Shown one piece after another: positions 968-55,145 of a DNA stretch of 64,000 nt. This DNA comes from Macrostomum lignano. Taxonomy: Eukaryota. The notes under the pieces were generated by a model that made no database searches, was not told the DNA's origin, and saw only the letters and a program-made list of their open reading frames with translations. Within the stretch, counting starts at the first letter, position 1. Each line of letters begins with the position of its first letter. The DNA is taken from positions 248,001 to 312,000 of the forward strand of contig NIVC01000843.1 of NCBI GenBank assembly GCA_002269645.1. Reading direction: 5' to 3'. A program made the position numbers and the translations under genes.

Positions 968-3799
968 TCAGAGTCCATCGTTGACAATTTCTAAATATTC
1001 TGTTGCGTCGCTTTGAGGCCGATTGACCTCCGTCTGATCATGGGACGACGTTGGAAGCAGCACGGAATACGTGACGGTCTTTGATTCCTGTATAAAGTTT
1101 GGGTATTGCACTGCTGTTATGTATCATGCGCTAATTATTCCAGAGTAGAACTTACATCTGCAAAATATGTTGTAGTCGCTGCTCTTGCTAGCTTCGGTTC
1201 TTGCTGCGGTTGTAACATTTCGTGGTTCACAGTTGCTGAATTCTCTTCAGAGGTTGGACTGGTACCAGTAGTCACGAGCAGTTGTACTGGCAAATCCTGC
1301 TGCAAATCATGTTTTCAAGTTGACACGTTTAGCATCAATGATTGAAAGTTAAATGTGGCGCTTTCTTTAAGAAGATGTATACCTTTTTTAATCGCCAAAT
1401 GATATTTACGACAAAGCCGCCCAAAACAGTCAATATAACGACGCCCAGCACGATTGCAACAATGAACACCAACTTATGTCGTTCTGTCTCATTGCAAATC
1501 TTCATACTTTTATTCCGATGGACGCTCCACAAAACTTTCGATTCGTTGTACTGAATTGCTTCACAATTTACCGTCAATACATTGCTAACGCTGCAATTCG
1601 GGCACAGCCAAACTGATTTAAATGTGTACGCTTTTGTTTTACTAACGTTAGCGATTAAGACCAGTGAAATACTGTTATTTAGCGAGTCGGAAGCTGCGCA
1701 GCTGTGCTCAGGAGCCGGCTCAGAATGCCAGGACTCGAATAAAAATTGTTAAGTCAGCGAGCCGGATGTGAGGCATTGACCATCGCTAGTGTTTGCAGAG
1801 ATTTTCAAATTTTCAGGCGGATCTGATATTTAAAAGACAAGTTGCTATTCATCCGAAATAGGTTATTTACCAACACACGTCAGTAGATTTATCATTTATG
1901 AACTTACAAAATACTTGGAGATGTCTGCTCTTGATGTCAAGCGGTTGTCCACTAAAACTGCTGCTGCAAGTGTAATTCCCAGCATCTTCTGGTCGAGCTT
2001 TTTCAATCATTTTTGTAGCAGGATGAGTATTGTTTCCCGAGGCAAGAGTGCGCCTGCTTGCCCGAGTGCCGAAATGCTCCAGTGTGACCCTAGTATTCGA
2101 ATCTCTGGTGCATTGCACGCTACAGTTCACAGCAAGTGAATAATTTATTGTTACCGATTGAAGCGGGATTTTAACTGCAAAGAGCAAAATATGCTTCTTT
2201 TTTTAAAATCGTTGATATAGTCCACTAAAAATCGCTTTGCGATTACAAATAGTGACTGATTTATAACTTTTTTATTGGTTTAGATCGAGCCACTTATAAA
2301 ACAAACTCAAGACAGACTCATGGATGTTACAAAGTTACTTACTTTGGGTGTAGACTTGCTCAATCCACATGTTCTCAAAATTCATGCAATTTTTTTCATC
2401 ATCACCCTCACTGGTGGCTTTCTTTCGGAGCAGTAGCATTCGAACCTACCATGAAAGCAATGAGGTGAAGATAATAAAGAGGTTAATCGTAGAAGTTGGA
2501 TGGATGCCCTATATTTTTTAGATATGGCCATACTTTTAGACAACCAGACTTACTCACTTCCCTCAAAAATGATCAAAACTGATCTGTGGTCGAGCACTAT
2601 TGCAACCTAAATTCACTGCAAATGAAGCTAAGTCTATGTGATCTTGTTGCTTTTTCTGAATCACCCAACCGCTTGGTTATCCGGATAAAACCACAAATTG
2701 AGTGCAAAATTTGCACCTGAAGATGAAGGCTTACGTACCCCTGGCCTGACGCAATCGACAGTGAGGTTATCTGCCGAAGATACTTCTTGTGGAGTCTTGC
2801 CGCAGAAATCCCACGAGCGGTTCTCTGCTTGTTCAAAGTTAGCCAGTCTGTTCTTAGTATCGCAGTGGTTTTGTCCGAAGTTCATCCCGTCTGTCTTGGA
2901 TGTCCATATCTCAATTTCTGCTGCTCGAGGGTTTAATATGCCACTTTTGTCTTTCTCTTCCCCGGTATGCAGCTCTGACGTAGTTTGAATGAAATGAAAA
3001 CCAATTGTTAAAGTCAAATCAATACTTTGACGTAAGAATCACTTCGTTTTTAGTGTATCGGATGGCGCAATACATGCTACAATGAATGTACAAGCAATTG
3101 ACCAAGAATATTGAAAACTTTCTCTGAAACGCACACAGAACGACTGCTTACCGCAGTTGTGGAAACTTAAAAGGCAGGGCCTTACGGGTGTACCACGTGA
3201 AAATAGCTACAAAACTATAACAAATTATATTATTTGGTAATTTAAACTGTCACAAGGTGCACTTCACAAAACGAAAAGGTGAGTGCTTTACTGTGTCGAT
3301 TTTTTTTATTGTAATTGATCATCACAACTACATTAAACAAACTCGTAAAACTCTGCATAGGCTATAGTTAAAAAATGCATTGAAAATAAACTCACTTCTA
3401 GCAGTGATGGTGACTGAGCTGATCAGTTTCTGCTCCTTTAGCTTTATCACAAACCAATGAAATCCATTGTCCGTATAGTTCAAGCCAACTTTAGAATGTA
3501 AGAATCTGAAGTCATCTGTCTTAGTTGCTTGATTTTTAAAGCACGTTGACTCAGTATTTCTATCATAAAAACTTGAAGACTGCCACGAATCACCGACTGT
3601 GTCTCTGGTGATGTATTCTCTACCTAAAATTTTTAAACAGCAAAGCTACATGTAAACATGATAAAAGTTGTTTAACTCAAACGTACGGTTACTCTCCGAA
3701 AATGATATCATATAATTCACACTCACATGCTTTGAAGTCTCCTGTAGTTTGTCTTATAAAAATTCCCACAGAAAAGCAGATGGTTGCCAGAATATTCAT
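968..3799 (-). pseudogene. Receptor gene A: SP - F-type-lectin-like domain - Ig1 - Ig2 - TM - ITIM/ITSM tail, with an in-frame TAA at 1749-1751
   Basis: Eight GT-AG exons with consistent phases: 3799-3727 (MNILATICFSVGIFIRQTTGDFKA), 3623-3396 (SWQSSSFY...FHWFVIKL...ISSVTITAR), 2974-2739, 2445-2343 (VRMLLLRK...CMNFENMW), 2174-1908 (C...DAGNYTC Ig), 1822-1383 (YPP... Ig2+TM, one stop), 1296-1156, 1087-968 (VTYSVL...TEYLEI). Confidence 0.8.
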
Positions 3800-6255: not shown

Positions 6256-9200
6256 TTAGCCATTCTCAGCATCTATCAGAGGCCCATCAGATACAATCTC
6301 AATGTAATCGGTGCAGTCGCTGACAGGTCGCGTGCTCGCGCCCGACGTCTCTTGTAGAATATCAGCGTTGAATTTGCCATTAGCTTTAGGTACCAGGGCT
6401 GTATATATGCATTCAGTTTCGTTCTGAAGTGAAGAAAATACGCGTAAAAATCTGTGACCAGAAGCTGCCTCACGTGCAGTGAGTTAAGGTAGCTACGTGT
6501 TCTGCTGGTAATCACATACCCCGTACGCAGAGTTCAGTCGACTGTTGGAAGCCTGATCGAAACTCTCTGTAGATCGCGGAGGCTCTCGTGGTAGTGCTTC
6601 ATCAGCTTGATCTTGGGCTACAGCTGGCTTTGTTTCAACTTCCTGAGACTTTTGCGGTTGCACCTGAACTGCCGGCTTCTAAAGTTTATAAAATAATTTA
6701 AAACTTCTGTGTAAATTTCAGTACAAGATCGTTATAAGAAATTCATTGGAATTCACCTTTCTCATCTGGTAGATGATCGCTAGAGCAAGAATGCCCACCG
6801 CAACCACTGTCGATACGGTTAAGACGAATGCCAACCATAAGGGTTCTTTCTGCTGTTTCGAGCCAACCGACTTCGTCTCTGAATATTTTACAGTGTTCAG
6901 TGTGGCTAAAAATCTCAACTAAAAATCCTAAATAAGTATAAAAATACGAGTAATACTCTAGTCTATCCTTATTTTACCCAGATAGTTTTCCACTGACGTT
7001 AGATACTGTACTACACGTAGTCCCTGCTAAACGTGTCAACGATTTTTACATTACATTACATTACAGTATAATATTTCTCCAATGCGTATTTTAAGTCCGT
7101 CATGACTTGTGAGACGTAAAGGACTTGCGTACCACATCTAGATATTGAAAGAATTTCGGTGATGGTCGAATGCCAGGGCACTCCTGACTGAACAGCCGTG
7201 CAATTTATAGTTAAATTCGACAAGCCGATGGCTGTACAACAGTCATAGCAGGTCCAACTGGATTTTTTCACTGAACCGTTGTCAAAAGAGTTGTTCAATT
7301 CCTCGGCTGTGACAGCAACAGTGGCGTTAATTTCACTTGAAAAATTGCCATTCACAGAGCAGCTGTGATTCGCTACTGGCTCTGACTCGGATGACTTGAA
7401 CTCGAAAGTCAGCAGTTGGCTGGAAGAGTTGGTGTCGCAGTTGCTGGACTTGACTATCCCGATTGTAAGGTCCATCGGAGGATCTGAAATACGGTAGAGT
7501 CTTTTAATTATAAGAAGTCATAGTTTACCAAGAATATTAAGAGGGGCTAAAATAGTGATGCAACTAGTAAATGAATGATATAAAAGAAATCTTTAAAAAG
7601 TGGCTGCTCCGAGCTTGATGTAGTTAGCATACTGGAAGTTACGCAAATGTATTAGTTAAAATTAGAATTTCATGTTTATTTAGTACGTCTCAGATAATGC
7701 TCACTTCTTAAATTTGTTTCATACATTAAACATATAAACAGTCTTGAGCCTAATCCCTTTTAAGTGCATCAACTCACACAGCACGCGAAGATACTTAGAG
7801 CTCAACACGACACCACCTGCTCTGCAGGTGTAGTTTCCCGCATCTGATGGTTGCACATGCGAAATCTCATAAGCCTGGCTTCCGTTTGCAAGAGTTCGAT
7901 TCTCGTCGTCGCGAGTCAGAGTGATCAGTGAGGTATTTATTGAGCAGTTTGATAGGCAGCTCACTGTCACACTTGAGTTCTGTTTCACTTGTCCAATTGA
8001 AGATCCGTTCAATGTTTGAAAATCAGCTGGAGAGATCAGATATGATTAGCGGTACATTGGATGGGAACTATCTTAAGATTTTAATTTTATATAGCGACTC
8101 ACTTTGAACGCCATGGAGACCGATCCACATATCGACAAAGTTCATGCACTGCCTTTGTGGCACAGTTTCATTGGCGACATATTTTCGAAGTAGTATTATC
8201 CGAACCTAATAAATAATAATAAGTAATTAATTTAATATTTACACCCACCCCATTTGGGCCAGATGTGCAACCGACAGCTCAGCCGCAGCTATTTGCGCGG
8301 TGCATCTGAAGGCTGCGTACGGCTGTTCAGTCCAAGGACTGGGAAGTCGCTCACACAACCTCAATTACCCCAGCTAATGCTGGCACCCACTTTACAGCTG
8401 AAGCAATGCAGAGTTAAGGGTCTTGCTCAAGGACACAAATAGTTTCAGTGCGATCGGGAATCGAACCCCCAACCTTCCAGTCGAGAGTCTGATGCAAACC
8501 ACCAGGCTACCACCCCCTGTACCAAACTGAGAACTTAATAAATTCTAAAATATTCTATATTTTGCCTATAATTTGGTGGATAAAGTTGGATCATTTCTAC
8601 TCTATTTAAACTTCACGCAAAAAATCGTTACCTGATCCCTGATACAAGGAACTGTCAGTGTTTCTCCATGAGAAACATTTGTTGGCGTTTTGCCGCAAAA
8701 CTCCCATGTCCCGCTCTCTGCATTATCATACACAGAGCTGATGCTCTTTGAGTTGCAGTTCTCCGACCCGAAATCCAGGTCCGCCTGAGACGTCCAGATC
8801 TCAATGTCTGCGGCTCGAGCGTTTAAATCGTCTCCAAAATTCGTAAGTTCTGTCTCGCTTAAGCCTGTTAAAATTTATAAATTGATAAAATAAAAACGTT
8901 AAAAAGCCTGATTTGAAAGTTTATTCACAAATTTTGCAATTAGACTCACTTCTGACTTTGACATTCACAGAGCTGATCAGTTCAGGCTTCTTTAGCTTTA
9001 TCACAAACCAGTGAAATCCTGCATCGGCTCCCGCATCATTTCCGTTTTTGCCCTCCTCTGTGTGCAAATATAGGTAGCTGCCGACTTGGTCACCACCAAC
9101 GGGCCGCTTGTAAAAGCAATATGCCTGCCTATTATTATTCAAAATCGACGACTGCCAGGAGCTTTCAATGGAGCCTTTCCGAACTTCCATTTGGCCTGAA

Positions 9201-21919: not shown

Positions 21920-21976
21920 TGTACCAAACTGAGAACTTAATAAATTCTAAATTATTCTATATTTTGCCTATAATTT

Positions 21977-23631: not shown

Positions 23632-24312
23632 CTTCGGTGACAGACACTTCGATGCCAGACACTTCGGTGCCAGACACTTCGGTGCCAGACACTTCGATGC
23701 CAGACACTTCGATGCCTGACACTTCGATGCCAGACACTTCGATGCCAGACACTTCGATGCCAGACACTTCGATGCCAGACACTTTGGTGCCAGACACTTC
23801 GATGCCAGACACTTCGATGCCAGACACTTCGATGCCAGACACTTCGATGCCAGACACTTCGATGCCAGACACTTCGATGCCAGACACTTCGGTGCCAGAC
23901 ACTTCGATGCCAGACACTTTAGTCCCAGACACTTCGATGCCAGACACTTCGGTGCCAGACACTTCGGTGCCAGACACTTCGATGCCAGACACTTCGATGC
24001 CTGACACTTCGATGCCAGACACTTCGATGCCAGACACTTCGATGCCAGACACTTCGATGCCAGACACTTTGGTGCCAGACACTTCGATGCCAGACACTTC
24101 GATGCCAGACACTTCGATGCCAGACACTTCGATGCCAGACACTTCGATGCCAGACACTTCGATGCCAGACACTTCGGTGCCAGACACTTCGATGCCAGAC
24201 ACTTTAGTCCCAGACACTTCGATGCCAGACACTTTAGTCCCAGACACTTCGGTGCCAGACACTTCGATGCCAGATACTTCGGTGCCAGACACTTCGGTGC
24301 CAGACACTGCGG
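23632..24312. repeat. 15-bp minisatellite, GATGC-dominated variant
   Basis: Read directly; same right flank as the 10800-11905 array. Confidence 0.95.
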
Positions 24313-25638: not shown

Positions 25639-26825
25639 TTTTGACGCCATGGAGGTCAATCCACATGTCGAAAGTTCATGCACTGCTTTCGTGGCACAGT
25701 TTCATTGGCGACATATTTTCGAAGTAGTATTATCCGAACCTGATAAATAATAATAAGTATTTAATTTAATATTTACACCTACCCCATTTGGGCCAGATGT
25801 GCAACCGCAACCTCAACAACCTCAATTACCCCAGCTAATGCTGGCACCCATTTTACAGCTGGGGGAAACTGAAGCAATACAGAGTTTGGTGTCTTTTCTC
25901 GGGATCACAAATACGCTCGTAGTTCCAGTGCGATCGGGAATCGAAACCCGGACCTTCCAGTCGAGAGTCCGACGCAAACCACCAGGCTACCACCCCCTGT
26001 ACCAAACTGAGAACTTAATAAATTCTAAATTATTCTATATTTTGTCTATAATTTGGTGGATAAAATTGAATCATTTCCACTCTATTTAAACTTCACGCAA
26101 AAAATTGTTACCTGATCCCTGATACAAGGAACTGTCAGTGTTTCTCCATGAGAAACATTTGTTGGCGTTTTGCCGCAAAACTCCCATGTCCCGCTCACTG
26201 CATTATCATACACAGAGCTGATGCTCTTTGAGTTGCAGTGCTCCGACCCGAAATCCAGGTCCGCCTGAGACGTCCAGATCTCAATGTCTGCGGCTCGAGC
26301 GTTTAAATCGTCTCCGATTTCCGTAAGTTTTTTTGGGTTAAGTCTGTTGAAATAAAAAAATTTATAAAATGAAGAAAATAGAGAAAAGCACGATCTTGAA
26401 AAGCTATTCCTAAATGTTACAAGCAAGACTGACTTCTGACTTTGACATTCACAGTTCAGGCTTCTTTAGCTTTATCACAAACCAGTGAAATCCTGCATCG
26501 GCTCCCGCATCATTTCCGTTTTTGCTCTCCTCTGTGTGCAAATATTTGTAGCTGCCGACTTGGTCATCACCAACGGGCCGCTCATAAAAGCAATGTGCCG
26601 ACCTATCATTTTCCAAAATCGACGACTGCCAGGAGCGTTCAATGGAGCCTTTCCTGACTTCAATTCGGCCTGAAATGTGGCATGATGCAATCTTACGTAC
26701 AGTCATAAAGCGAAGCAGTGTTATAGTCACCAAAACTTACATTTTTTACAGCTCACTGAGCTGACAAGTGCCATAGGCAATGCAGTCGTCTGGACGGCCC
26801 AGAATATCAGTGAGAATCTACTCAT
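25639..26825 (-). pseudogene. Receptor locus D: 5' half (SP and three lectin-like exons) with frameshifts
   Basis: Exon 1 26825-26741 (MSRFSLIFWAVQTTALPMALVSSVSCKK). Exon 2 26669-26434 has a 10-nt deletion vs B that gives a stop. Exon 3 26343-26112 is 1 nt short in an A-run. Exon 4 25739-25639 has a 2-nt deletion. Confidence 0.8.
25746..25996 (-). mobile_element. SINE with an internal deletion, orthologous intron 3 position in locus D
   Basis: Same flanks as the B and C copies; lacks about 80 bp of the 3' body. Confidence 0.75.
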
Positions 26826-29036: not shown

Positions 29037-29355
29037 TGTCGCGACTTTCCTAGTCATTTCTTTAGTTCACCTTCACTTGTCTCTGTTTACTCTGTTTTCT
29101 CTCTTCTCTGTCCAGCTCAATCTTGTTATTCTTATCTCTCTCTCCCTTGCTGCCTTCTGATTGGCTCTCCATTCTCGCCTCTCTCTTCAGTCGCGCACTC
29201 CACCCCCTCTCTTTATTATTCTAGGCTCAACCCCCCAAAGTTAAATGTTCTATAAATATATCGGTTTGGGCCCTGCGCCCACTTACTGCTCCTTCAATTT
29301 AACTCCAATTAAATAGTTTTTAGTTTAGTTAGTATTTTTTCTACATGGCGCCCAA
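29037..29355 (+). mobile_element. LTR remnant with PBS start, abutting gene E
   Basis: TGTCGCG...CTACA (~309 bp), TATAAA at 29251, ATTAAA near 29309, then immediately TGGCGCCCAA (start of a tRNA-Lys-type PBS). No second LTR or TSD was found. Confidence 0.6.
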
Positions 29356-29365
29356 AAGCAACATA

Positions 29366-32300
29366 ATGAAAATCTTGCTCAGCATCCTGATTTCCGCATT
29401 GTTGATGGCAAGAATTGTGGCGACGAATTCAAGATTGTGTGAGCCAAAGCTTTGTTGGTCTTCAAAACAAACAATACAAATAGTTATTCGTTTTGAAAAC
29501 TATCAGGTTAAAAAATGAAACTTTCAGGCCGACTCCAAGTCACGCGCAAAGCGATCGCCAGCTCATGGCAGTCATCTCACTATACGAGCTCTTATACTCG
29601 TACATCAAGGTGCTTTTACACTCGATCAGAAATCAGGACGGGACAGTGGGACTTTTTTACCTCCAGAGAATACAACTCGTCTGCAGTTGACGGATACCAT
29701 TGGTTTGTCCTTTTGCTGAATCAAAGTGAAAGAATTCGGTCTGTCACTGTCGAAAGTAGAGGTGAGGGAGTTTCTGCTGCCAAATTTATGTATTTTTGCG
29801 AATATATATTCTGCGAAGGCACCAAGTCTACTATGTCCTGAAAAAGTGGAATCAAAAAAATTTCAGATGTACCAGGATATTCAGTAGAGTTCCGTGCAGC
29901 AGACGTTGAGCTCTTTGCCTCACAGTCGGACCTGAGCAGCCAGCTCGGGTCTGAGCACTGCAGCTCTCGGCAAATCAGTTCGGTTTTCAATTCAAACCCG
30001 TCGGCTTGGAGCTACTGCGGTAAAACAAAATCAAAATTATATAAAGGAGAACACTTGACTGTAAAATGCGACCGAACAGTAAGTCCATTCCAGCAATTGA
30101 TGGGTCTGTTGGAATACATAATAGATTTCATATCTTAAAAAATAAGAGTTGACTACTAAAAGTCTGACTACTGTGGAGTTTTGTAAACTTTCAGGTCCGT
30201 ATGTTGCTGCTTAGGAAGTTCGTTGCGAATCTGACAAATGGATACCATCAGTGCATGAACTTTGTGAACATGTGGCTTAATCGCATCGACTCTGAGGGTG
30301 AGCTTGGGATCCAAGTAGCCATAAGATCTCTAGCTTTAGTTTTAGAATAATAGTCGGTTAATGCCCAACATATAGTACTTAGTATCCAGAAAAATACTCG
30401 ATGAGGAATATGTTACATTTTCTTTTTAAAAATTAAACTGAGTTTTTTCTCCCGAACCTATTGTTGATGAGGGCTCGTATTTTATAGCTTGTAAAAGGGG
30501 CACGATATTTGAAAAAGAGGAAGTGTAAAATGGTACATAAAGTCCTCAGATGCTTTATTTAAAGTACAATTGGAGCTAAAATTCTTGCAATTGCTTTTCA
30601 ATAATATACTGTGGCGGCTGATTCAGACCAGGTTTGTTGCCATCTGTTCGGCAAGAGTGACGCAGCGACTTCCCATTGTGCTGTAAAAATTATATGACAG
30701 TAGCTTTGCTGGCGCCCCTGGTACTGGTGTCTGTTCCAATAAAATTGTGTTGACGCCTCAAATTCTGGCAGCCCCAAAAATGCGACCCCTCGCAGATTGA
30801 AAATCGTGTATTCCTTAGTGTCTATTATAAGGGCTTAGACACATTGAATTTAATCCAAGATATGTTTCCACAAGTAATGGAGCTTTTGCCCATGGTAGCA
30901 AAGGCTGGCACAGCAGCTGCATCGGGGAGTACGAGATTTGCTAGCAGGAAATCTGCTAGCCGAAGTTTGCTAGCCGAAGTTTGCTAGCCGAAGTTTGCTA
31001 GCCGAAATCTGCTAGCCGAAGTTTGCTAGCCGAAATCTGCTAGCCGAAGTTTGCTAGCCGAAATGTGCTAGCCGAAATCTGCAAGCTGAAGTTTGCTAGC
31101 CGAAATGTGCTAGCCGAAATGTGCTAGCCGAAGTTTGCTAGCCGAAATCCGCTAGCCGAAATCTGCTAGCCGAAATCTGCTAGCCGAAGTTTGCTAGCAG
31201 GAATTTTGCTAGCGAGGATTTTGCTAGCTGCCTTGCTCTCGTAGCTGTTGCATGTTATTTGCTGTGTTTTGATTCCGATTTGAGCTGCTTTGATTCGTAC
31301 GAGTAAATATATAACTTATATACCATATACTGCCACTACCAGCCATTAAGACGGAAAGTTGTGTGTATAGATAAGTTTAAATTTAACTACCTGAACTACA
31401 GCTGCCTGAGCTACCTGAGCTACGGCCTTACAGCTGATAATGCTAAAACATTATCAAATGTCTACGAGTAAAATAGGACAAAAATTATAAATGATTTTAA
31501 CGATTTCCAAGTGCAGTTTTAGCATACACAGTACTTTAGCATACAGTAACACACATGTTGGTGTACAGTATCTATAGCTAGATACATGTATTTCCAAGGT
31601 ACAATTTACTATAGCTATATGTATTGTTAATGTATAGATATTTTCCATCGCTTACGGCACTGTGTACAAGCAAAAACTCTATGCAGGTGTGGCCCACAAG
31701 CTCTTACCCTGTGATCATGGATGTAATATATTTACTTTATTCAATAGCTTGTATATGAACTTTTTAATCCACCTACGTTAAAACCTAAATCTTATTTTCT
31801 TTTTGTCTATGACGTCATTTACTGATTGCGTTTTAACACGTACATGTACGAGAACCCACGGCTAAGGCTAGATGGCAGATTAAGTCGTCCAGATTAAGTC
31901 GTCCCCACAACAGATTGCCTTCTTAATTTACTCTGACTACCGAGAGCAGGCAAACAAAACAACAGAGCCAATGAACTTGAAGAATAAAATTAACAAGCAC
32001 ATTTTGTATATAAATTACATTCAGATTCTTGTCGTACGAGTGCTAGCTACAAAGAAATTTCTGATTTAGTAATTTTTAATTGCATTATATTACGATACAA
32101 CAATGCAGGCCGCAATTATTATTATATATTGCAATTTGCAGATCACTGCTAATAAGCACGACAAAGAGAGTCATTAGAGCGAAAAGCGCAAATTTATTTG
32201 TCCTGCATGATAAGTCCTGCAAAGTTTCTTGCGAAATCGGACAAGAAAAATGTCTCTATAGCAAATTACAACTTCGTAAATTGCTGTTCGCCGGTTTTGG

Positions 32301-34337
32301 TTAGATTATCGCTAGCAGATTTCGGCTAGCAAAATCCTCGCTAGCAAAATTCCTGCTAGCAAACTTCGGCTAGCAGATTTCGGCTAGCAGATTTCGGCTA
32401 GCGGATTTCGGCTAGCAAACTTCGGCTAGCAGATTTCCGCTAGCAGATTTCGGCTAGCGGATTTCGGCTAGCAAACTTCGGCTAGCAGATTTCCGCTAGC
32501 AGATTTCGGCTAGCGGATTTCGGCTAGCAAACTTCGGCTAGCAGATTTCCGCTAGCAGATTTCGGCTAGCGGATTTCGGCTAGCAAACTTCGGCTAGCAG
32601 ATTTTCGCTAGCAGATTTCGGCTAGCACATTTCGGCTAGCAAACTTCGGCTTGCAGATTTCGGCAAGCAAATTTTTCGCTAGCAAACTTCGGCTAACAGA
32701 TTTCCTGCTAGCAAATTTCATAGACCCGCTGCATCGATTTGGTCCATAAGTTCACCCCTTAGATTTTAATTTAGACATATCTGTCACAAGCAATACTAAA
32801 AGCAATACTTCATTTGCATCTTCCGCAGAGAAGCAAGATCAGTCACAGAATCGTGGAACATAGGCTAGACTGTCAAACGAACGCAATGTGCTTGTGATCG
32901 AAGCGGAGTTTTGGTCATGCTAAAATATGTTATTTTGTTATTGTTGAGCAAATTGCATTTTTGACGTCACCTTGTATTGATTAGTACAGTGAAATTTGAT
33001 GAAATAAATTGCAATTCACAGCTGTAATTCATGATTAGGTTTCATAGCTGCAATGGACCAAATTGATGCTTGTTGGACCAAACTAAATACTGCTGTGCCA
33101 GCCTTGCTACCATAGACAAAAATCCATTAGTTCAGTAAGCAACTCTTTGAATAAATTCAGTGTGTAAGCGCAAATAGGCTGTAAAGTTATAAAGAACTTA
33201 ATAGCAATACACCACATTAGAGAGACCAATCGTTTCTCTGAAACTCGTACCTTGTAATTAACAAAATTACTGGTAGGAAATTATTGCTTTTTACAGCAAT
33301 TTCTGTCTGTACCGTTACTTTTTGTTTTAAATTCAATGGATGGAGTATTGATGAGCAGTATATACATCGCAGAAAAATCGCCACAAACACAGCAACTCTT
33401 AGAACAGCGAAGTGGTAAATCTTGGGGTAGGGCAGACTATAGAAGGGCAATGTAGAAATTTCAAATAAACTTAAAATGAATTTATGAACAGAAATTAACA
33501 ATAGAAGTGCTCTGAAATTCTAAATTTTCATTCTTCAGTTCCGCAAAGTCGTCACGAAATCTCCACAGAGTTGGGCATCTGCAATGCTGCATCTCCAAGC
33601 GCTGATGTCAAAGTCACCTTTGAGTCTCCAGACGCATCCACGCACGTGTGCAGAGCATTCGACTCTAAAGGCAAGCAGCTGACAATTACTGCCGTGAAAT
33701 ATCCAACATGCGATGTGGCTGACAATGTGCTGAGATCCCAGTGGCTGTGCTCAAACTGCAGCAGCTCAGCCAATGTGTCTGTAATCTGTCAGGCTGATCA
33801 ACATCAAGTTAGAAAGATTGTCAAATCACGCTGTCCCCACGTGTATGAGAGTAAGTTGTTTACCATTTATCTACGAAATGGTTATTGAAAGTTCTTTGAA
33901 TAGTAAAATGAAGCCTTCCATGATCAAACTTTCAGATTTTTGGCTGTTAGGCGTGTTATTGACCGAGATAATTGTATTAATCATATTGATATCCCTTGCA
34001 ATCCTGATCTACTACGAGAAGGTAAGCTTGACATGAAATCTTAATGTAAATAGTAAGATTGAGAGTCAAAGGTCTGTAATAAGAGGCAGTAGTCTTCATG
34101 TTATCTGCAAGGCATCAAACTGAGCAAGATTTTGTTTTAAAAAGAGCTATATATCGAACTGAATCCCATCCAAAATAAATTTAGAAAAAATTAATTCCGA
34201 AAAATTATTTGATAACTTTGATAAACGGCCACACTTAAAAGTTCCAGAGTTGTGCTCATCCTCCTAACCAACCCAGCGATCCTCCAGCCGAGCTGAGAAT
34301 GCAGCGAGCTGCTCAAAGCGTCTACGTGGATGACATG
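29366..34337 (+). CDS. Receptor gene E: SP - F-type-lectin-like - Ig2-type - TM (with Glu) - tail; terminal exon unresolved
   Basis: Exons 29366-29438 (MKILLSILISALLMARIVATNSRL), 29528-29761, 29867-30078, 30195-30297, 33539-33850, 33936-34021 (FWLLGVLLTEIIVLIILISLAILIYY), 34248-~34337. Exon lengths match gene F (73/234/212/103/-/86). A candidate last exon lies at 36524-36628. Confidence 0.8.
30924..32727. mobile_element. Non-autonomous foldback-type DNA element in intron 4 of gene E
   Basis: GGG...CCC termini; inverted subterminal arrays of GCTAGCCGAAGTTT/GCTAGCCGAAATCT units (30935-31235 vs 32310-32715); 8-bp direct repeat GCTGCATC at 30916-30923 and 32728-32735. Confidence 0.85.
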
Positions 34338-34624
34338 GTAGCCATGACAACCAATAGGACTGACAACGTTTCGCCGCCTCGGTCAGTTTACGTTAGCGAT
34401 TGAGGAAGCGCTTGATTCTGTATTCGGCAATAACTATAAGTAACTATATGGAGCGTAACTATTTGGAGCTAACGTCGCCAGAGAATCATCGTGACCATTT
34501 TAAACACGAATATATTCTCGCTCCATCTCAATAACTTGATAACTCGTAAAAACATATCCAGGATTTCGAAATTATAAATTATAGAATGGTCATCAAATAA
34601 AACCAAGAGCTGTGAACTATGGTT

Positions 34625-34815
34625 GATTATAAATTATTATATTTTCATATTAAATTTGGTTCGGGTTTTGGTACTGGGTTCGGATATTGGTACAGGATTT
34701 TGGTTTTGATACTGGATTTGGGTTTTGGAACTGGGTTTGGGTTTAGTACCGGGTTTGGGTTTTGGCCCCGGGTTCGATGTTCGAGGTAGGTGGGATGCTT
34801 GGTTCAGGTTCGGCG
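34625..34815. repeat. Degenerate ~18-bp tandem repeat (GGGTTCGG/GGTTTTGGTAC-rich)
   Basis: Recurrent ggttttggtactgggttc-like units; inverted copy at ~43920-44110. Confidence 0.55.
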
Positions 34816-35419
34816 CTAAGATATCAGGAGAAAAAATGAAAACACGAAGACCCCTAACTTGCTACTACTCGAACTATCAATAATTCTACCACTTAGAACA
34901 TTCGATTTCATCCTGATTCAGGTATTTTCCCTAAAATAGCCAGGTTTTTCACGTCATAATTGGTCATCTGAAACTCTGGTTGTTGAGGCTCGGTGACTGC
35001 ATGGGCTTTGAGTTATATGTTTTGAGTTACATTTAACATCGTTCACTGATTTTCGCTACTCTTTCCTCCTAAGTTACATATGTGCATTAGTTAGCCAAAT
35101 ATTTAATTCAAGTCTCTCAGATTTTGAGAAATGTACAGTTAGGCACTTGAATTTAAAAATGTAATAATTTTATCATAAAAGTAGAAATGAGGATCTGGAG
35201 TCGTACTTTAAAACAGAAAAATCGAATGAAAAGAAATACAATGCTCAGACGAGTGTAGGCATTTCGAGTTTGAGTGAATTAATCGGAATGAGATGCTTAC
35301 TAAAAGGTGTTTAAAAACAGCCCATAAAAGTACAGAGCTCTTAGATTACGAGTAATTTAAAGACTAAGTATTCCATTTTGCTGATTTTTATTTCACTTGC
35401 GCTGTGGGGGATTCTTGAA

Positions 35420-36350
35420 AACGCAAAAGACAGCTACGAATTCGATTTACAGCAGAACTACCAAGAGGGGGGGATCCCCCCCGACAACTTTTTTGCTGCG
35501 CCGGAACGGAGCAACGCAGGCACACGAAATTCAAGAACACGGGCCAACTATTTGTTGCGCACCCTCTCAAACAAGAATCAAGTCGCCAGCCCTCTGGAAC
35601 GTCGAGATAATCAACGATTTTTCTAGGAAGTCCGATTTTTCCCATAAGCGCCAGTGTATTCAGTTCACCCCTGTGCGCCAATCAGCACTGCGCCTCAGTG
35701 CAGCCTTGCCAAGCCTCCAAATTTCACCAGCACGTCGACCACATGTGTCTGCATCAGCTCTAGCTTCGTTGGTCACTGGCCTTCACCCAGGCGGAGCTTC
35801 TAGACCTTCAACAGGTGGCACCAGGTGACTATGGACACCGAAAAAATGAATTTAAAAATTGTTTTAGCAACTTTTGTTAATTCTACTTGATCTTGAGTCC
35901 ATATAGAAAAGTTGATAATTTTTTGTCATTTTTTCTCTTGGCGAAAATTCGGTTCAATTTACGGTTCAATTAACTAATTACGTCATCACGTCTCACGTTT
36001 GAGAGTCTAGCTGAAAATGACCAGGTGTTAATGTTAGCCCATTATTAATGCTTGATCAGCGAAACTAGAGAAATTCGCATCAGGGTGTCCATAGTCACCT
36101 GGTGCCACCTGTTGAAGGTCTAGAAGCTCCGCCTGGGTGAAGGCCAGTGACCAACGAAGCCAGAGCTGATGCAGACGCATGTGATCGACGTGCTGGTGAA
36201 ATTGCTGATTGGCGCACAGGGGTGAACTGAATACACTAGCGCTTATGGGAAAAATCCGACCTTCTAGCAGAATCGTCGAATATCTCGACGTTCCGGACGG
36301 CTGGCGACTTGATTATTGTTTGAGAAGGTGCGCAACAAAGAGTTGGCTTA
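35420..36350. repeat. Unclassified dispersed repeat as an inverted pair (third copy ~52680-53060)
   Basis: 35530-35839 mirrors 36084-36350 (ggtgtccatagtcacctggtgccacc end); the same sequence occurs in the last intron of gene F. Confidence 0.75.
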
Positions 36351-37478
36351 CTGTTAAAGCATTCATATGCACGTAGTTTAATAAATTACTAAATTTTATC
36401 ATGCATGTAAATATTTCCTCAAAACATTGTAGATTTTAATTTAGAATTACATGCTTCCAATTACAAAGCTTCTACGAGCTAGAACACAGTCACAATGTTG
36501 GTTAATAACTATTCTTTCTTCAGTATCAAATACCATCCTTAATAATCATCAAATATTCCGTGACTTCACTTTCTGGCCGCTGTTCGTTAGAATTTGGTTC
36601 AGCTGTTGAAGGCATGAGCGAAGCGTAGGTGCAGCTGTTTCCTTCCTGAAGTATTATTATATATCGGATATCTGACTGAAGCTGAAGTAGTTTTAAACTA
36701 AATTTGTCTTACAAATCCGTAAATTTTTATTGGGAAAACTGCCACTATAAGTTGTATATAAGCGACTATTTTACTTCGGTAAATACTTGAGTTGCGATAT
36801 TAAAAAAAATAATTGATGGCAGTTATGCATTACTAGCGTGTAAATAATTATATTTACCTGCTGTAGTCCCAAACTATGCCGAGCTGCTTCTTTTATTGAA
36901 AGCAATACATGTAAAATCACTGTTTATTACTTTTTACAATACAAATGTCTTTTCATCTGATGCATCACACTACTAAGGGATTCCGAATGGCGCGATTTTG
37001 GAGGTGAGGTGGGTGTCAACCCTCCTCGCCTCTCATTGGCTGGCGCCCCGATCACTAGGTGATCGATACGCGTATCGATATCGGCGCTCGGCGCGCGCGC
37101 GCGCCGCAGGCGCCAAGCGCCGCAGGTTACCCTCCCCAGCCGCAGGCGCACCTACCGATATTAGATCCCAATAAATCATTATTGGGATGTACATTGGGAT
37201 GTAGGGTGTACATCCGGCGGGGGGATTCCCACTCGTGTGCACGCGGTTAGTGTTGGGGGAACCCCGATGCTGACGCTGGCCGAAAAGCACTTTTTAGAGG
37301 GGTTGTCGATTGGGTCTGTATATATACTAAAAAATCTGCTCAGCTCGCCTGTTATTGGTCAATCGCCAAAAACCAACCAAAATCATCAAAAATCACCCCC
37401 CAAAATCACCACCCACCCCGTTGAAGAATATTGGCTAGAGTTCAGTCATCCAACTTATTTTCCCTTGGAGGTGAAAAT

Positions 37479-48067: not shown

Positions 48068-49685
48068 TCACCTTACAGTTGCTAGCTTTCGTTCAAGCGT
48101 TTGATGGCTTCCAATAGCCTGTTGGAAATATTTTAATATTTTGTTATTTATATTAATAATTCTGTACTTTAATTGCTGCGTAGGCGCATGGATTGTACAT
48201 AAGGAAAGACACAAAAGATCAGAAAAGTTGCATATTAATACCATTTTTCTACAAGCAAATATCGCTCCTGCGACAACAGCTATTAACAGAATCGAGGAAA
48301 CTGCCATCAATATGTATATGTAGAACTGAGTAAGTTCAGGTGAGGATGGCCTTTGAAGCTCTTTAGTTTCCTTAGCTGAAAAGTATAAATGAATTAATTT
48401 TTATGGGTACTGTAATGCCTAGCCAAAATGATAAAATGAATCAAGTCTGGTGTGTCTAATCTTAATGGACTAATTTCAATGAGAACTGGACAACTCACAA
48501 GCAACTGATAGATAGCCAGAGCTGACAACAACTCCACCAACACTGCACGCATAGACTCCATAATCTTCCTCATTCACAGAGTCGATTACATAGGTCTCAT
48601 TTCCAGTTGCAAGTGTCCGGTTAGTGCTCAAGTGTATTAATTTGATACTTGCCAAACTATCAATGCAACTCACATTGCATCTCACCTTGGCACTGGTATT
48701 CGAGCTTATATTAGACGGCGGTGCTATGTCAATGGTAACTGAAAGAATAAATAAATGTATTTTATGGCTAATGAAAAAGAGTAAAAAGTATGTAATCTTA
48801 ACTCACTATCGATCGAGATATACTTATAGGCCAAAATACTAAAAGCCATGCTCTCAATTGCGTTGGTTTTGTTGTTCCACGCAGGCTTGCGAAGCAGTAC
48901 TGTTTTGGCCTGAATTTTTTTGAGGGAATTGCTTGGTATATAAGTGTGTTAAGTTATTAACACACCTTTACTGAATTATAGACTGATAAGCTCACCTCCT
49001 GGACACTGGAACAGTTCACTTGAATTGCAGTTGGCTTAGAAGATCCACAGAAAGTCCAATATTTCTTGTTAGTCTCAAATACTGAGCTCATATTTCTGGA
49101 GTTGCACTTTTCAGAACCAAATCCAATTGTTTCTGTTGTTGTCCAAACTTCAATTCTCTCTGCTAGCTGGCTTTCGCTTGTAGCTGCATTTTTGGGATGC
49201 CACTTTACTTGCATATTATAATAAAATATTTTTAATAAATCAATTAACTGATAATGTATGAATAGGTACGAGTATGCTCACGTGTGATAAAAAACCTGTC
49301 TGTCCAAACAGTACTTCTAAGCTGGACGGCCAACCAGTGATAGCCTTTGTCAGCGGCTGAGCCTTCGTCAGCTGATTTGAAGGCCCCGTCCAACTGACTT
49401 CCCCCAATCCCACAAATAAACGGGCCTGTAGTGTACTCTTTGAAACTCGATGACTGCCAGGTCTTTTCTCCTGCACCAGTAGTTACAAATTCAGTACCTA
49501 GTAGTAATTTAAAATATGTAATGCATGTAAGCATTCAAAACTGTGATAGAATTTATTATTGACTATTGAGACATTTACGAAAATTTCTATTACTTACATT
49601 CCAACGCAGACTCCGCAAAATATTGGAGCAGGCAAGTCGCCATAAAAATGTAAATTAAAGCAGATATCAGTGCGGAATTAGTCAT
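48068..49685 (-). CDS. Receptor gene G: SP - F-type-lectin-like - Ig1 - TM - short tail
   Basis: Exons 49685-49598 (MTNSALISALIYIFMATCLLQYFAESALE), 49497-49270, 49207-48996, 48909-48807 (103 nt), 48738-48499 (EDYGVYAC), 48375-48242 (TM), 48118-~48077. There is no Ig2 exon, and the end of the tail is uncertain. Confidence 0.78.
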
Positions 49686-51928: not shown

Positions 51929-54900
51929 TTATTCAGATTGCTGTTCAATACCATCGGAGATGATCTCCAAGTATTCGGTGGCATCGCTATTGACCCGACT
52001 GCTCTGCGACAACTCCATCATCTGTTCGTCGGGATTAACCGTATCGTAGCAGCACTCGCTCGTTATCTGTCTCTGAAGTGGTGATTGACAAATTCAACAA
52101 GTAGTGGTAGCAACGTTCAATTTTATAGCATACAAAAGATGATCTCGAGAAATTACCGTTGTTTTTGCTTAGAGAGATAATACAGATTTTCTCGATTTTC
52201 AATAAATTACTACTTGCTAGAGTACTAACGCGAGGAACAGTCGGAAGAGATTATTTCAAGACTGTGACCCACGCACAGCTGTGAAAACAAATCGAGTTTT
52301 TCCGATTTGCTCCTAGTTGAATAACTTCTATATATGGTAAGCCATGACCTCAAATGTCCTCGCGTTTAAAAATCTGTTCTGCTCAGAAACTAAACTCCTG
52401 GCCTAACTATCAACTTGGTTAGCTCAACTATCAAGCCAACTCGAAGCAAACACATGCTACGAGTTTCATGTGATTCATGTAGTTTCGTGTGATTTTCGTA
52501 ATATCGAAATATAAGAAAGCGTCCATTGGGCGCTTTAAAAAGTCGAATTTTCGTCTCAGAAAATCATATTTTAAAGAGACAAATTGCACTTTTAACAGTA
52601 GGAATGCCAAGCCATTTTTCCGCCCGTCGAACAACCAAGGTGGGGATTTTCCTTTTTTCATATACGAGTAGAATCCCTCCCTGACAATTTCTTTTGCTGC
52701 GCCAAAACGAAGCAACGCAGGCACACGAAATTCAAGAACACGGGCTAAGTTTTTGTTGCACGTACACCTTATCAAACAAGAACCAATTCTTCAGCCCTCT
52801 GAACCGTCGAGATATTCGACGATTCTGCCAGAAGGTCAGATTTTTCCCATAAGCGCTAGTGTATTCAGTACACCCCTGTGCGCCAATCAGCACTATGCCT
52901 TAGTGCAGCCTTGCCAAGTCTCCAAATTTCATCAGCACGTCGACCACATGCGTCTGCATCAGCTCTGGCTTCGTTGGTTACTGGCTTCTGGACCTACAGC
53001 AGGTGGCACCAGGTGACTATGGACACCCTTGTTGCGAATTTCTCTAGTTTCGCTGATCAAGCCTCAACTGCTGAGCATCCTCGGCGTAGATGTGCATAGC
53101 TTTGATATGAGGATATATTTCAGCGTTGAGAATCGTACTTTCGCAAACAACTATAGAAAGATAGATCAGCACAGGCCAATCATAACTGAGGCTTTTAAGA
53201 AAAGATAAAAAATGAAATGTTGTTATGGTTTCGCTCTTTTACTCAAAATATAAAAAGTCGCTTCACCAATCATCCGCAGACTCACCCGGAAGAGTTCAGA
53301 ACTATTGCTATCCTCATTAACTTCTGCTTCCAGCACCGATATGCTGGGCTGGGTGACATCGGTTGTGGTTGCTGCCACGGCTTTCTGCTGAGGCGCATCG
53401 CAGTTCAAAGCGGCCATTGGATGAGAAGAGACCGCTGGGGGTTCATCTTTGTTGCTTTGAGGCTGGCTGCAGAACTGATGGTTTGTAAAAACAAAAATTA
53501 GCTCAAGGTAATTGTTGCATCAATACCAATCTTGCTCTTTTGCTTGGAGCTTTGTACTATGCAATACTTACCTTCTTGCGAGCAAAGACGAATAAAGCGG
53601 ATGCCAATATTAACAAAATAAAAACAACTGTCAGGACTATTACCAGCGGCCAAGGTTCTAAAATAGTTTTTTTAACCGAAGATTCAAATCGTATTACTTG
53701 ACGCCAATGTCTGTCCAGTATTGCCATTTACTTTTGCTAAAAAAACTTACTATTTTTTGGGCATTCTGTGCCAATAGTTGTTTTAGCTTGATGCCGATTA
53801 GCATCGCAGATTACAGACACATTGGCTGAGCTGCTGCAGTTTGAGCACAGCCACTGGGACCTCAGCAAATTGTCAGCCACGTCGCAGGTTGGATTTTTCA
53901 CGGCTCTAATTGTCAGCTGCTGGCCTTTAGAGTCGAATGCTTTGCACAAGTGCTTGGATGCGTCTGGAGACTCAAAGGTGACTTTGACATCAGCTCTTGG
54001 AGTTGCTGCATTGCAGATGCCCAACTCTGTGGAGATTTTGTATCGACTTTGCGGACCTGAAAGTACGAAGTCATTCTGATTTCTGATTTGTGTGCATCTA
54101 CCAAACTGAAATCCATTTCAAATCAGATCGAAAAATTAAATTTTTTTCATCTTAACTAGAAATATCTCAATGCTTATATGCCAACATGCCTTCTCATATT
54201 AGAGCAAGCATACACAATTTAACTCACCCTCAAAGTCGATGCGATTAAGCCACATGTTCACAAAGTTCATGCACTGATGGTAGCTATTTGTCAGATTCGC
54301 AACGAACTTTCTAAGCAGCAACATGCGGACCTGAAAGTTTACAAAATTTTAGTAGTCACACTTTTAAGTGTCAACACTAATGTTCTAAATATAAAATCTA
54401 TAAATCATTGTAAGTGACCCATCAAATTGCTGGAATGTACTTACTGTTCGGTCGCATTTTACAGTCAAGTGCTCTCCTTTATCTATTTTTGATTTTGTTT
54501 TACCGCAGTAGCTCCAAGCCGACGGGTTCGAATTGAAAACCGAACTGATTTGCCAAGAGCTGCAGTGCTCAGACATGAGCTGGCTGCTCAGGTCCGACTG
54601 TGAGGCAAAGAGCTCAACGTCTGCTGCACGGAACTCTACTGAATATCCTGGTACATCTGAAATTTTTTTGATTCCATTTTTTCATGACATAGTAGACTTG
54701 GTGCCTTCGCAGAATATATATTCGCAAAAATACATAAATTTGGCAGCAGAAACTCCCTCACCTCTACTTTCGACAGTGACAGACCGAATTCTTTCACTTT
54801 GATTCAGCAAAAGGACAAACCAATGGTATCCGTCAACTGCAGAAGAGTTGCGATCTCCGGAGTGAATGAAGTCCCACTGTCCCGTCCTGATTTCTGATCG

Positions 54901-55145
54901 AGTGTAAAAGCACCTTGATGTACTAGTATAAGAGCTCGTATAGTGAGATGACTGCCATGAGCTGGCGATCGCTTTGCGCGTGACTTGGAGTCGGCCTGAA
55001 GCATCAAAATTATTGCTGTTTTTTTTAAATGAAAAATTATCAAAAACATCTCAACTTATTTCTTTAACTTACACAGTCCCGAAGTCGCGGCAATCAGACT
55101 TTCAATTACCGATGCAACAAGCAGAACGCAGGCCAGAAGCTTCAT
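51929..55145 (-). CDS. Receptor gene F, apparently intact: SP - F-type-lectin-like - Ig2-type - TM - ITSM tail
   Basis: Exons 55145-55073 (MKLLACVLLVASVIESLIAATSGL), 54995-54762, 54656-54445, 54330-54228, 54056-53751, 53657-53572 (TM), 53474-53286, 52072-51929 (CCYDTV...SDATEYLEIISDG). Phases are consistent. Confidence 0.85.

What the first reader, a model, noticed from the sequence alone, without database searches (positions are those of the whole stretch)
29645..29690. Hypervariable patch at the predicted sugar-binding His in otherwise identical E and F exons
Seen: exon 2 of E and F encodes the same peptide except one R/S change and WDFFTSREYNSS vs WDFIHSGDRNSS, a cluster of replacement changes. 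This position reads LHS in A, LHT in B and FKS in G. Established: in F-type lectins the His of the HT motif before the WW.VDL strand binds fucose. Inference: diversifying selection on ligand specificity, with His lost in E and G.
Basis: partly seen in the sequence, partly recalled or inferred. Interest (0 to 1): 0.72.

Follow-up and report, generated by a model that had tools for sequence, protein, structure and literature searches.

The report
Unconverted patch in flatworm receptor paralogues
Two neighbouring flatworm receptor genes were made almost identical by gene conversion, except for a 25-base island that changes five residues in a surface loop; the island looks like old divergence that escaped copying, not fresh adaptive change.

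Summary
E (+, exon 2 at 29528-29761) and F (-, 54995-54762) encode the same exon-2 peptide except for R/S and WDFFTSREYNSS vs WDFIHSGDRNSS. Nine of the 12 differences in a 424-nt stretch fall within 25 nt (29655-29679; permutation P<5e-6).

The window is Macrostomum lignano. E and F are old paralogues: exon 1, introns 1 and 4, and the transmembrane and tail exons do not align. Exons 2-4, with introns 2-3, were homogenised by gene conversion.

Inside the patch, synonymous and non-synonymous divergence are equal (pS 0.35, pN 0.33, omega about 0.9). This matches the distance to an outgroup paralogue H (pS about 0.28-0.35). The rest of exon 2 has no synonymous differences. A second divergent island lies in intron 3. 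The patch is identical in the second F copy found and in all three H copies.

Diversifying selection is not supported.

The domain is a galactose-binding-like jelly roll (AF2 pLDDT 89). F-lectins are among its closest structures but not specifically so, and the F-lectin motif and profiles fail. The His is conserved in the family (12/17) and lost in E and G, but its equivalence to the fucose-binding His52 is unproven.

The parts
29655..29679 (+). Core of the divergent patch in gene E (codons F74-S82; E-specific TTT TTT ACC TCC AGA, then GAA TAC AAC TCG).
   Evidence: One search gives the list of E/F differences. One search gives the codon analysis and the scan statistic. polarises the changes with outgroup H.
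54844..54870 (-). Corresponding patch in gene F (TTC ATT CAC TCC GGA GAT CGC AAC TCT = F I H S G D R N S).
29523..30302 (+). E arm of the E/F homogenised block (exon 2 acceptor to exon 4 donor, including introns 2 and 3). It is 93.7% identical to F 55000-54223. The sub-tracts 29523-29654 and 29680-29946 are under 1% diverged.
   Evidence: (I2).
54223..55000 (-). F arm of the homogenised block.
30107..30178 (+). Second divergent island, in intron 3 of E (23 differences in 72 nt against F, about 54415-54347). It is non-coding and serves as a control showing that islands arise without selection on the protein.
29345..34403 (+). Gene E, 398-aa type I membrane protein. Exons: 29345-29438 (signal peptide), 29528-29761, 29867-30078, 30195-30297 (jelly-roll domain), 33539-33850 (Cys-rich second domain), 33936-34021 (transmembrane), 34248-34403 (tail, stop).
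   Evidence: all junctions GT-AG, CDS of 1197 nt in frame. P0001 and P0039 support exons 3-7.
53223..55145 (-). Gene F. Exons: 55145-55073, 54995-54762, 54656-54445, 54330-54228, 54056-53751, 53657-53572, 53474-about 53280. The last exon is probably spliced further, as in P0038. F is colinear with paralogue H (PAA53557/PAA92527).
   Evidence: P0038 is a near-identical product of another F copy.
33534..33814 (+). Exon-5 similarity block between E and F (F 54061-53781), 90.7% identical with pS 0.18. The introns around it do not align.
2343..3799 (-). Paralogue A, exons 1-4 (reads F-L-H-S at the patch position).
8103..9195 (-). Paralogue B, exons 2-4 (reads Y-L-H-T).
48807..49685 (-). Paralogue G, exons 1-4 (reads A-F-K-S; the His is replaced by Lys).
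   Evidence: P0002 is its annotated product.

Best explanation
E and F are old paralogous genes of a Macrostomum lignano family of type I membrane proteins. The architecture is signal peptide, galactose-binding-domain-like jelly roll, Cys-rich or Ig-like domain, transmembrane helix, and a tail with tyrosine motifs. The two genes lie convergently, and their patches are about 25 kb apart.

Ectopic gene conversion has overwritten exons 2-4 and introns 2-3 of one gene with the other. The donor was most likely F-type, because F is colinear with paralogue H along the whole gene while E matches only in exons 2-5.

The 25-nt patch is a short segment inside the youngest tract that was not converted. 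Either it was restored by mismatch repair of a mismatch-dense heteroduplex, or two tracts ended against it. It therefore keeps the old E-versus-F divergence at silent and replacement sites alike.

The consequence is that two otherwise near-identical ectodomains differ in five residues of the loop just before the core HWFV strand. By topology and by a weak alignment to F-lectins, this loop lies at the loop-rich, ligand-binding end of the barrel. E has lost a family-conserved His (H to T) and gained an Arg two residues later.

Shown: the mosaic structure, the equal pS and pN, the age of the patch and the fold. Inferred: the direction of conversion, the way the island escaped, and the location of the loop at a binding face. 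Unknown: whether selection keeps the island, and what the ligand is.
For: 1. Block structure. The only E/F similarity detected is 29523-30302 (93.7%) and exon 5 (90.7%). Exon 1, introns 1 and 4, the transmembrane and tail exons and the flanks do not align. Intron 2 is 98% identical (2 differences in 105 nt), so the identity is not due to protein constraint.

2. Mosaic. Divergence by segment: 29523-29654, 0.8%; patch, 36%; 29680-29946, 0.7%; 29947-30106, about 5.6%; intron-3 island 30107-30178, 32%; 30179-30302, 4%.

3. Patch substitution pattern. pS 0.353 (2 of 5.7 sites) and pN 0.328 (7 of 21.3 sites). The rest of exon 2 has 0 of 47 synonymous and 1 of 157 non-synonymous differences. Fisher p = 0.011 for synonymous sites (patch against the rest of exon 2), and p = 0.006 when intron 2 is included.

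4. Age. Patch pS equals the E/F-to-H pS in exons 2-3 (0.28-0.35).

5. Lineages. Polarisation with H (L001, L002) gives 5 changes on the E lineage, 4 on the F lineage and about 4 on the H lineage. All three are roughly equidistant in the island.

6. Colinearity. H aligns to F from the 5' flank to the tail, but to E only in exons 2-5.

7. Stability. The patch is identical in the second F copy found (P0038), which differs from the window's F at 4 other domain residues. It is also identical in three H copies.

8. Structure. The AF2 model has pLDDT 88.8 and pTM 0.81. The patch lies in the loop before strand 88-107. Foldseek hits are to galactose-binding-like jelly rolls.
Against: - The E-derived changes are all in the 5' half (29655-29665) and the F-derived changes are all in the 3' half (29670-29679). 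A simple old island predicts that they are interspersed. Chance of perfect segregation is about 2/126 = 0.016, a post hoc figure. This hints at two separate events.
- Patch pN (0.33) is higher than the domain-wide pN to H (0.17-0.22), so the loop evolves faster than the framework. Some selection for divergence cannot be excluded.
- No genome-wide set of paralogues or alleles was available. E-type exon 2 is known only from this window.
- The 3D position of the patch relative to a binding site was inferred from topology and a 50%-probability profile alignment, not from coordinates.
Confidence: 0.6

Rival explanations
1. Two independent short-tract events after homogenisation. One micro-conversion (or templated multi-nucleotide change) from an unsampled paralogue went into E (29655-29665), and another went into F (equivalent of 29670-29679).
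For: - Outgroup polarisation shows perfect segregation: 5 E-derived changes are followed by 4 F-derived changes, and each cluster carries one synonymous change.
- The subfamily shows other cassette-like loop replacements. P0001 (E-type) has DPDVKD where E and F have DVPGYSVEF, and KSKIDK/KSKLYK variants are shared in a mosaic pattern.
Against: - No donor was found within 3 mismatches in the window, or within 1-2 mismatches in the window, L001 or L002.
- It needs two rare events side by side.
- The segregation statistic is post hoc and rests on 9 sites.
Confidence: 0.2
2. After the exons became identical, positive (diversifying) selection on ligand specificity drove rapid amino-acid replacement by point mutation in the sugar-binding loop.
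For: - Five of the 12 E/F replacements in the domain are concentrated in 6 codons.
- The loop precedes the core strand, as His52/CDR2 do in F-lectins.
- The family's ectodomain evolves fast overall (omega 0.5-0.6 between paralogues).
Against: - Omega in the patch is about 0.9, not above 1. The N:S counts of 7:2 match the 21.3:5.7 site ratio (Fisher p = 1.0).
- Two synonymous changes and two double-hit codons occur in 25 nt, while about 170 flanking neutral sites carry only 2 changes. Point mutation would need a local mutation-rate excess of roughly 30-fold.
- A comparable island exists in intron 3.
- The patch is invariant in the second F copy found and among three H copies.
Confidence: 0.1
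3. Assembly or sequencing artefact, for example a collapsed or chimeric consensus of several paralogues in a repeat-rich polyploid genome.
For: The window is full of perfect long repeats (2991-nt 100% inverted repeat and near-100% direct repeats). The M. lignano genome is known to be hard to assemble (my own knowledge).
Against: - Both versions keep the reading frame and intact GT-AG gene models.
- The F patch is reproduced exactly in an independently annotated protein, P0038, from another assembly.
- The H loci from GCA_002269645.1 carry an intermediate, sensible state.
Confidence: 0.04

Closest known systems
Mosaic (discontinuous) ectopic gene conversion between tandem or inverted paralogues that leaves islands of divergence, as described for primate red/green opsins, globins, RH and MHC/KIR genes (my own knowledge; not checked in the literature here)
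   Same: - Near-identity extends through the introns inside a sharply bounded block, while the flanks are unalignable.
- Short islands keep old divergence at silent and replacement sites.
- The island coincides with a functionally exposed loop.
   Different: - The island is very short (25 nt), and its derived changes are polarised by lineage into two halves.
- No population or multi-species data exist to show that selection maintains it.
- The arms are inverted, and the patches are about 25 kb apart.
F-type lectin domain (fucolectins: eel AAA 1K12, striped bass MsaFBP32 3CQO)
   Same: - The jelly-roll fold matches: Foldseek 3cqo_A at rank 2 (E = 1.9e-4) and 1k12 at rank 17.
- Motif echoes: WQSS/TQSS, HWFxVxL/PWWRVDL, SVTVxxR/SVTITNR, and Arg residues at positions aligned to R79, R86 and R131.
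- The aromatic pair plus His before the core strand aligns to AAA F45-Y46-H47.
- Loop variability near the binding end recalls the eel and oyster isoforms (PMC5712786).
   Different: - No profile hit reaches threshold.
- The H-X24/26-R-X-D-X4-R/K motif is absent from E and F. Only loose versions (H-X31-R-x-D-x5/8-R) occur in P0004, P0023 and P0005.
- There is no Cys-Cys pair.
- The residue equivalent to D64 is not conserved.
- The h2DGx-like AVDG lies in a different place.
- The segment between the conserved Cys and the core strand is about 29 residues, against 9 in AAA.
- The protein is membrane-anchored, with a second ectodomain and a cytoplasmic tail.
Galactose-binding-domain-like superfamily in general (discoidin/F5/8 type C, CBM32, APC10/DOC1, SUN)
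   Same: - Top Foldseek hits all have E about 1e-4 to 1e-3 and TM 0.5-0.68.
- Four paralogues give sub-threshold PF00754 hits over the same segment.
   Different: No family-level assignment is possible. In the searches run here the family appears in M. lignano only, apart from one unattributed JGI metagenome protein.

Membership tests
F-type lectin domain (FTLD) | Fucose-binding sequence motif H-X24(26)-R-X-D-X4-(R/K) (PMC5712786) | tested here: not met
   A regular-expression search finds the motif in the positive controls AAA and MsaFBP32-N. It finds it in none of 17 family sequences. E has no His at the site. F reads H-X31-R-D-V-P... Only the loose form H-X31-R-x-D-x5/8-R occurs, in P0004, P0023 and P0005.
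F-type lectin domain (FTLD) | Significant match to curated FTLD or related profiles (Pfam PF22633/PF00754) or to FTLD sequences of solved structures | tested here: not met
   E has no Pfam hit at E<=10. Neither phmmer nor hmmsearch against PDB sequences returns an F-lectin at E<=10. Paralogues give only sub-threshold PF00754 (11-17 bits against a cut-off of 28.2) and PF22633 (14.5 against 27.8). hhalign against 3 FTLDs gives probability 50% (local) and 9% (global).
F-type lectin domain (FTLD) | F-type jelly-roll fold | tested here: inconclusive
   The AF2 model (pLDDT 88.8) matches FTLD structures at ranks 2, 3, 17 and 29. APC10, CBM32, F5/8C and SUN domains match equally well, all at E of 1e-4 to 1e-3. 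The fold is shared and does not discriminate.
F-type lectin domain (FTLD) | Contiguous Cys82-Cys83 disulfide in CDR4 and the cation-site motif h2DGx upstream of Cys50 | tested here: not met
   No CC dipeptide occurs in any family member. AVDG(Y/F) exists but lies after the conserved Cys, directly before the HW strand.
F-type lectin domain (FTLD) | Binds L-fucose | not testable with these tools
   Needs recombinant ectodomain and glycan-binding assays.
Galactose-binding-domain-like (discoidin/CBM32/FTLD/APC10) superfamily | Eight-stranded jelly-roll beta sandwich with N and C termini paired at one end and variable loops at the other | tested here: met
   with 39 PDB matches at E<=1e-3, all from this superfamily. 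Sub-threshold PF00754 hits occur in 4 of 8 paralogues.
Ectopic gene-conversion tract | Paralogues near-identical through exons and introns inside a bounded block; flanks and the other introns unalignable; silent divergence inside far below that to an outgroup paralogue | tested here: met
   E-F pS is 0.04 in exons 2-3, against 0.28-0.35 to H. Intron 2 is 98% identical, while the H introns do not align.
Site under diversifying (positive) selection | dN/dS significantly above 1 at the site or patch, and variability among alleles or close copies | tested here: not met
   Patch omega is about 0.9, with N:S counts equal to the neutral expectation. The patch is identical between the window's F and P0038, and among P0004, P0023 and P0024. 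Power is low (9 codons, few copies).

The most novel reading that the evidence does not exclude
The genes belong to an undescribed flatworm family of immune-type receptors: an F-lectin-like or discoidin-like head, an Ig-like or Cys-rich domain, a transmembrane helix, and ITIM/ITSM-like tails. In this family, gene conversion homogenises the framework while selection keeps short loop cassettes distinct. The cassettes would be the pre-strand loop at 29655-29679, the loop between the two conserved Arg residues, and the KSK(LY/ID)K loop. This would give a germline-encoded repertoire of binding specificities, and E would be a His-less variant with altered ligand preference.
Probability: 0.15. Interest if true: 0.6.

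Novelty: new member of a known kind. Interest (0 to 1): 0.3.

Why it matters
As it stands, this is a clean small example of a general caveat. A cluster of replacements in otherwise identical paralogues is the expected footprint of patchy gene conversion. It should not be read as diversifying selection unless silent sites and introns are checked.

The by-product is an apparently uncharacterised gene family. In these searches it appears in Macrostomum only, apart from one unattributed metagenome protein. It encodes membrane receptors with a very divergent jelly-roll head resembling F-lectin and discoidin domains, and tails with tyrosine motifs.

If the loops that resist homogenisation prove to be ligand-contact loops, the family would be a candidate invertebrate recognition-receptor repertoire in a regeneration and sexual-selection model organism.

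Tried and rejected
- Rfam scan of the window: no RNA family. ARAGORN: no tRNA.
- Pfam on E: nothing. PDB sequence search with E and with a 5-sequence profile: only chance-level hits, including a hemolysin at E about 0.09, which I disregarded.
An alignment of exon fragments without a scaffold was misaligned and discarded (A3). It worked once the spliced E query was used as the first row (A4, A7).
- The first AF2 model, from a 14-row alignment, was poor in the patch loop (pLDDT below 50). It was replaced by the 28-row model.
- The look-up of encoding contigs for P0001: not on record. No DNA of the second E-type copy could be obtained.
- Donor search for either patch version in the window, L001 and L002: only self-matches.
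- The word-indexed protein search missed close relatives. P0004 was not found, so absence there is not evidence.
- The literature search for a described Macrostomum lectin or receptor family returned nothing specific.
- I considered anchoring the His52 equivalence on the conserved Cys (C60-F-Y in E against C50-T-H52 in AAA). This would put His52 at E Y62 rather than in the patch.
- Model coordinates are not exposed by the tools, so the patch could not be superposed on fucose-bound 1K12.
Full report
**What is there**

The window is eukaryotic, with GT-AG introns and tttcag acceptors. Its proteins match only Macrostomum lignano entries.

It holds a cluster of paralogous genes, found by tblastn and read out as explicit gene models:
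- A (-, 3799-2343)
- B (-, 9195-8103)
- a lone exon-4 fragment, C (about 16939-17022)
- D (-, about 26667-25671, frameshifted)
- E (+, 29345-34403)
- G (-, 49685 onwards)
- F (-, 55145-about 53223)

E assembles into an intact 398-aa protein from seven exons: signal peptide, a domain of about 180 aa encoded by exons 2-4, a Cys-rich exon-5 domain, a transmembrane helix, and a short tail. F has the same plan.

**Check of the observation**

E exon 2 (29528-29761) and F exon 2 (54995-54762) encode identical peptides except for R/S (29599) and WDFFTSREYNSS vs WDFIHSGDRNSS.

The patch sequences are:
- E: TTT TTT ACC TCC AGA GAA TAC AAC TCG
- F: TTC ATT CAC TCC GGA GAT CGC AAC TCT

That is nine differences in 25 nt (29655-29679): two synonymous, and seven non-synonymous nucleotide changes in five codons. 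The 424 nt from 29523 to 29946 contain only three other differences. In 200,000 permutations, no 25-nt window ever held nine of twelve differences.

**Why the rest is identical: gene conversion**

E and F are not recent duplicates. blastn finds only two similar segments. One is 29523-30302 against 55000-54223 (93.7%), which runs from 5 nt before exon 2 to 5 nt after exon 4 and includes introns 2 and 3. The other is exon 5 (90.7%). Exon 1, introns 1 and 4, the transmembrane and tail exons and the flanks do not align.

Inside the block, divergence is a mosaic:

| Segment | Divergence |
|---|---|
| 29523-29654 | 0.8% |
| patch 29655-29679 | 36% |
| 29680-29946 (includes intron 2; 2 differences in its 105 nt) | 0.7% |
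| 29947-30106 | about 5.6% |
| 30107-30178 (middle of intron 3; 23 differences in 72 nt) | 32% |
| 30179-30302 | 4% |

Near-identity of an intron, next to unalignable introns, is the signature of ectopic conversion and not of protein constraint. The intron-3 island shows that short unconverted islands arise here without any coding selection.

**An outgroup**

The exhaustive profile search found a full-length paralogue, 'H' (P0004 = PAA53557, P0023 = PAA92527, P0024). I fetched its loci from GCA_002269645.1 as L001 and L002.

H is colinear with F from the 5' flank through the tail. It matches E only in exons 2-5. F and H are therefore sister genes, and E most likely received its domain exons from an F-type gene.

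H reads WDFIHSGEYSSS (TTC ATT CAT TCC GGT GAA TAC AGC TCG). Polarisation of the patch differences gives:
- 29655, 29656, 29659, 29660 and 29665 are derived in E (I to F, H to T, G to R, plus one silent change).
- 29670, 29671, 29672 and 29679 are derived in F (E to D, Y to R, plus one silent change).
- H has about four changes of its own, three of them silent.

**Selection test**

Nei-Gojobori counts in the nine patch codons give pS = 0.353 and pN = 0.328, so omega is about 0.9. The 7:2 counts equal the 21.3:5.7 site ratio (Fisher p = 1.0). The rest of exon 2 has 0 of 47 synonymous and 1 of 157 non-synonymous differences.

Silent divergence in the patch is significantly higher than in the flanks: p = 0.011 within exon 2, and p = 0.006 when intron 2 is included. 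It equals the silent distance between E/F and H in exons 2-3 (0.28-0.35). The patch therefore has an older genealogy than its surroundings. It is not a burst of replacements on an identical background.

A second F copy (P0038) differs from the window's F at four domain residues but has the identical patch. The three H copies differ at six domain residues, none in the patch. Nothing here indicates hypervariability, although power is low.

One observation does not fit a simple old island. The E-derived and F-derived changes are perfectly separated into a 5' and a 3' half (chance about 0.016, post hoc). This leaves room for two separate short-tract events from unsampled paralogues. No donor exists in the window, L001 or L002.

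**What the domain is**

E alone hits no Pfam family and no PDB sequence. A family profile hits no F-lectin in the PDB at E<=10. Four paralogues give sub-threshold F5/8 type C hits over the FFHS...HWF...SVTV segment, and one gives a sub-threshold PF22633 hit.

With a 28-row alignment, AlphaFold2 gives a confident jelly roll (pLDDT 88.8, pTM 0.81). Foldseek returns only galactose-binding-domain-like structures: APC10, the striped-bass F-lectin 3cqo (rank 2), a streptococcal F-type lectin module, CBM32, F5/8C, SUN and 1k12 (rank 17). All have E between 1e-4 and 1e-3. The fold is shared, and F-lectins are not singled out.

The defining F-lectin features are listed in PMC5712786. Tested here:
- The motif H-X24/26-R-X-D-X4-R/K is found in the control sequences recovered from the PDB. 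It is found in no family member; only P0004, P0023 and P0005 show a loose H-X31-R-x-D-x5/8-R.
- There is no Cys-Cys pair.
- The residue equivalent to D64 is Q, K or L.

hhalign of the family against three FTLDs gives 50% probability in local mode. It aligns WQSS to TQSA, HWFVLLL to PWWRVDL, SVTVESR to SVTITNR (R79), the next conserved Arg to R86, and the F-F/I-H/T-S of the patch to AAA F45-Y46-H47-G48. That segment is loop CDR2, which walls the fucose methyl pocket. His52 would fall on E S82.

The patch therefore plausibly lies among the loops at the binding end of the barrel. It sits immediately before the descending core strand, next to the variable loop that follows the return strand. Its His is not shown to be the fucose-binding His.

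**Family conservation**

In a 17-sequence column count, positions 74-77 ([FY]-[FIL]-H-[ST]) are among the better-conserved positions, with His in 12 of 17. Positions 78-83 are as variable as several other loops, such as 112-118, 129-134 and 164-169.

The His is replaced by Thr in E, Lys in G and P0022, Arg in P0003 and P0011, and Gln in the chimeric P0013. E's Thr is the only small uncharged replacement, and it comes with a new Arg at +2. This is a real functional lead, but it is a fixed paralogue difference, not hypervariability.

**Verdict**

The cluster is real and highly non-random. The best explanation is a short island of old divergence inside a gene-conversion tract between two inverted paralogous receptor genes (confidence about 0.6). 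Secondary micro-conversions are the main rival (about 0.2), and post-conversion positive selection is unlikely (about 0.1).

The F-lectin label is a resemblance at fold level and in weak motifs, not membership. The phenomenon is ordinary. The gene family is uncharacterised and mildly interesting. No step had to be referred.

Noticed in passing
E tail 34248-34403; proteins P0005, P0011, P0021, P0023, P0038: Cytoplasmic tails of the family carry tyrosine motifs resembling ITIM/ITSM ([STVI]xYxx[IVL]). Examples are TVYLEIV, TEYLDIV, TEYLEII (F-type P0038), VVYAQVL, TEYTEIV and ETYADIY. E has SVYVDD and SVYVSD. Together with the lectin-like head and an Ig-like or Cys-rich second domain, this looks like an immune-type receptor family.
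   Followed up: partly
window 34188-37178 and 41555-44545; also 39994-41435 vs 44552-45995: A 2991-nt inverted repeat is 100% identical and duplicates E's last exon (copy at about 44485-44330). Direct repeats nearby are almost 100% identical. This is either very recent segmental duplication or an assembly artefact.
   Followed up: no
window 30107-30178 (F about 54415-54347): A second highly divergent island (23 differences in 72 nt) lies in the middle of intron 3, inside the E/F homogenised block, while both ends of the intron are conserved.
   Followed up: yes
window 25671-26667 (-) vs 8103-9195 (-): D is a copy of B, part of a duplication spaced about 17.4 kb away. It has a 10-nt deletion in exon 2 and a 2-nt deletion in exon 4, so it is an apparent pseudogene (or carries assembly indels). 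A lone exon-4 fragment (C) lies at 16939-17022.
   Followed up: partly
start of exon 3: window 29867-29895 (E), 54656-54628 (F); protein P0001: The E-type copy P0001 has DPDVKD where E and F have DVPGYSVEF. This is the loop between the two conserved Arg residues, aligned to F-lectin CDR4. P0001 shares KSKIDK with F, against KSKLYK in E. Loop cassettes seem to be shuffled among otherwise near-identical copies.
   Followed up: partly
window 10036-11500, 14200-15100, 21830-23800, 30949-31228/32293-32730, 57000-61200: Long arrays of short tandem repeats with periods of 9-20 nt, several of them GC-rich. One pair, in E's long intron 4, is arranged as inverted arrays.
   Followed up: no
window about 18000-22000: A GC-rich (about 53-55%) segment gives a weak chance-level tblastn hit to a stretch (RVMDVEVPKTKKDLERFLG) that resembles a retroelement polymerase. 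It is probably a retrotransposon lying among paralogues B, C and D.
   Followed up: no
L001 1282-4812, L002 1386-3323: The H paralogue loci in GCA_002269645.1 have an integrin-alpha-like gene about 5 kb upstream. No counterpart was looked for next to F in the window.
   Followed up: no
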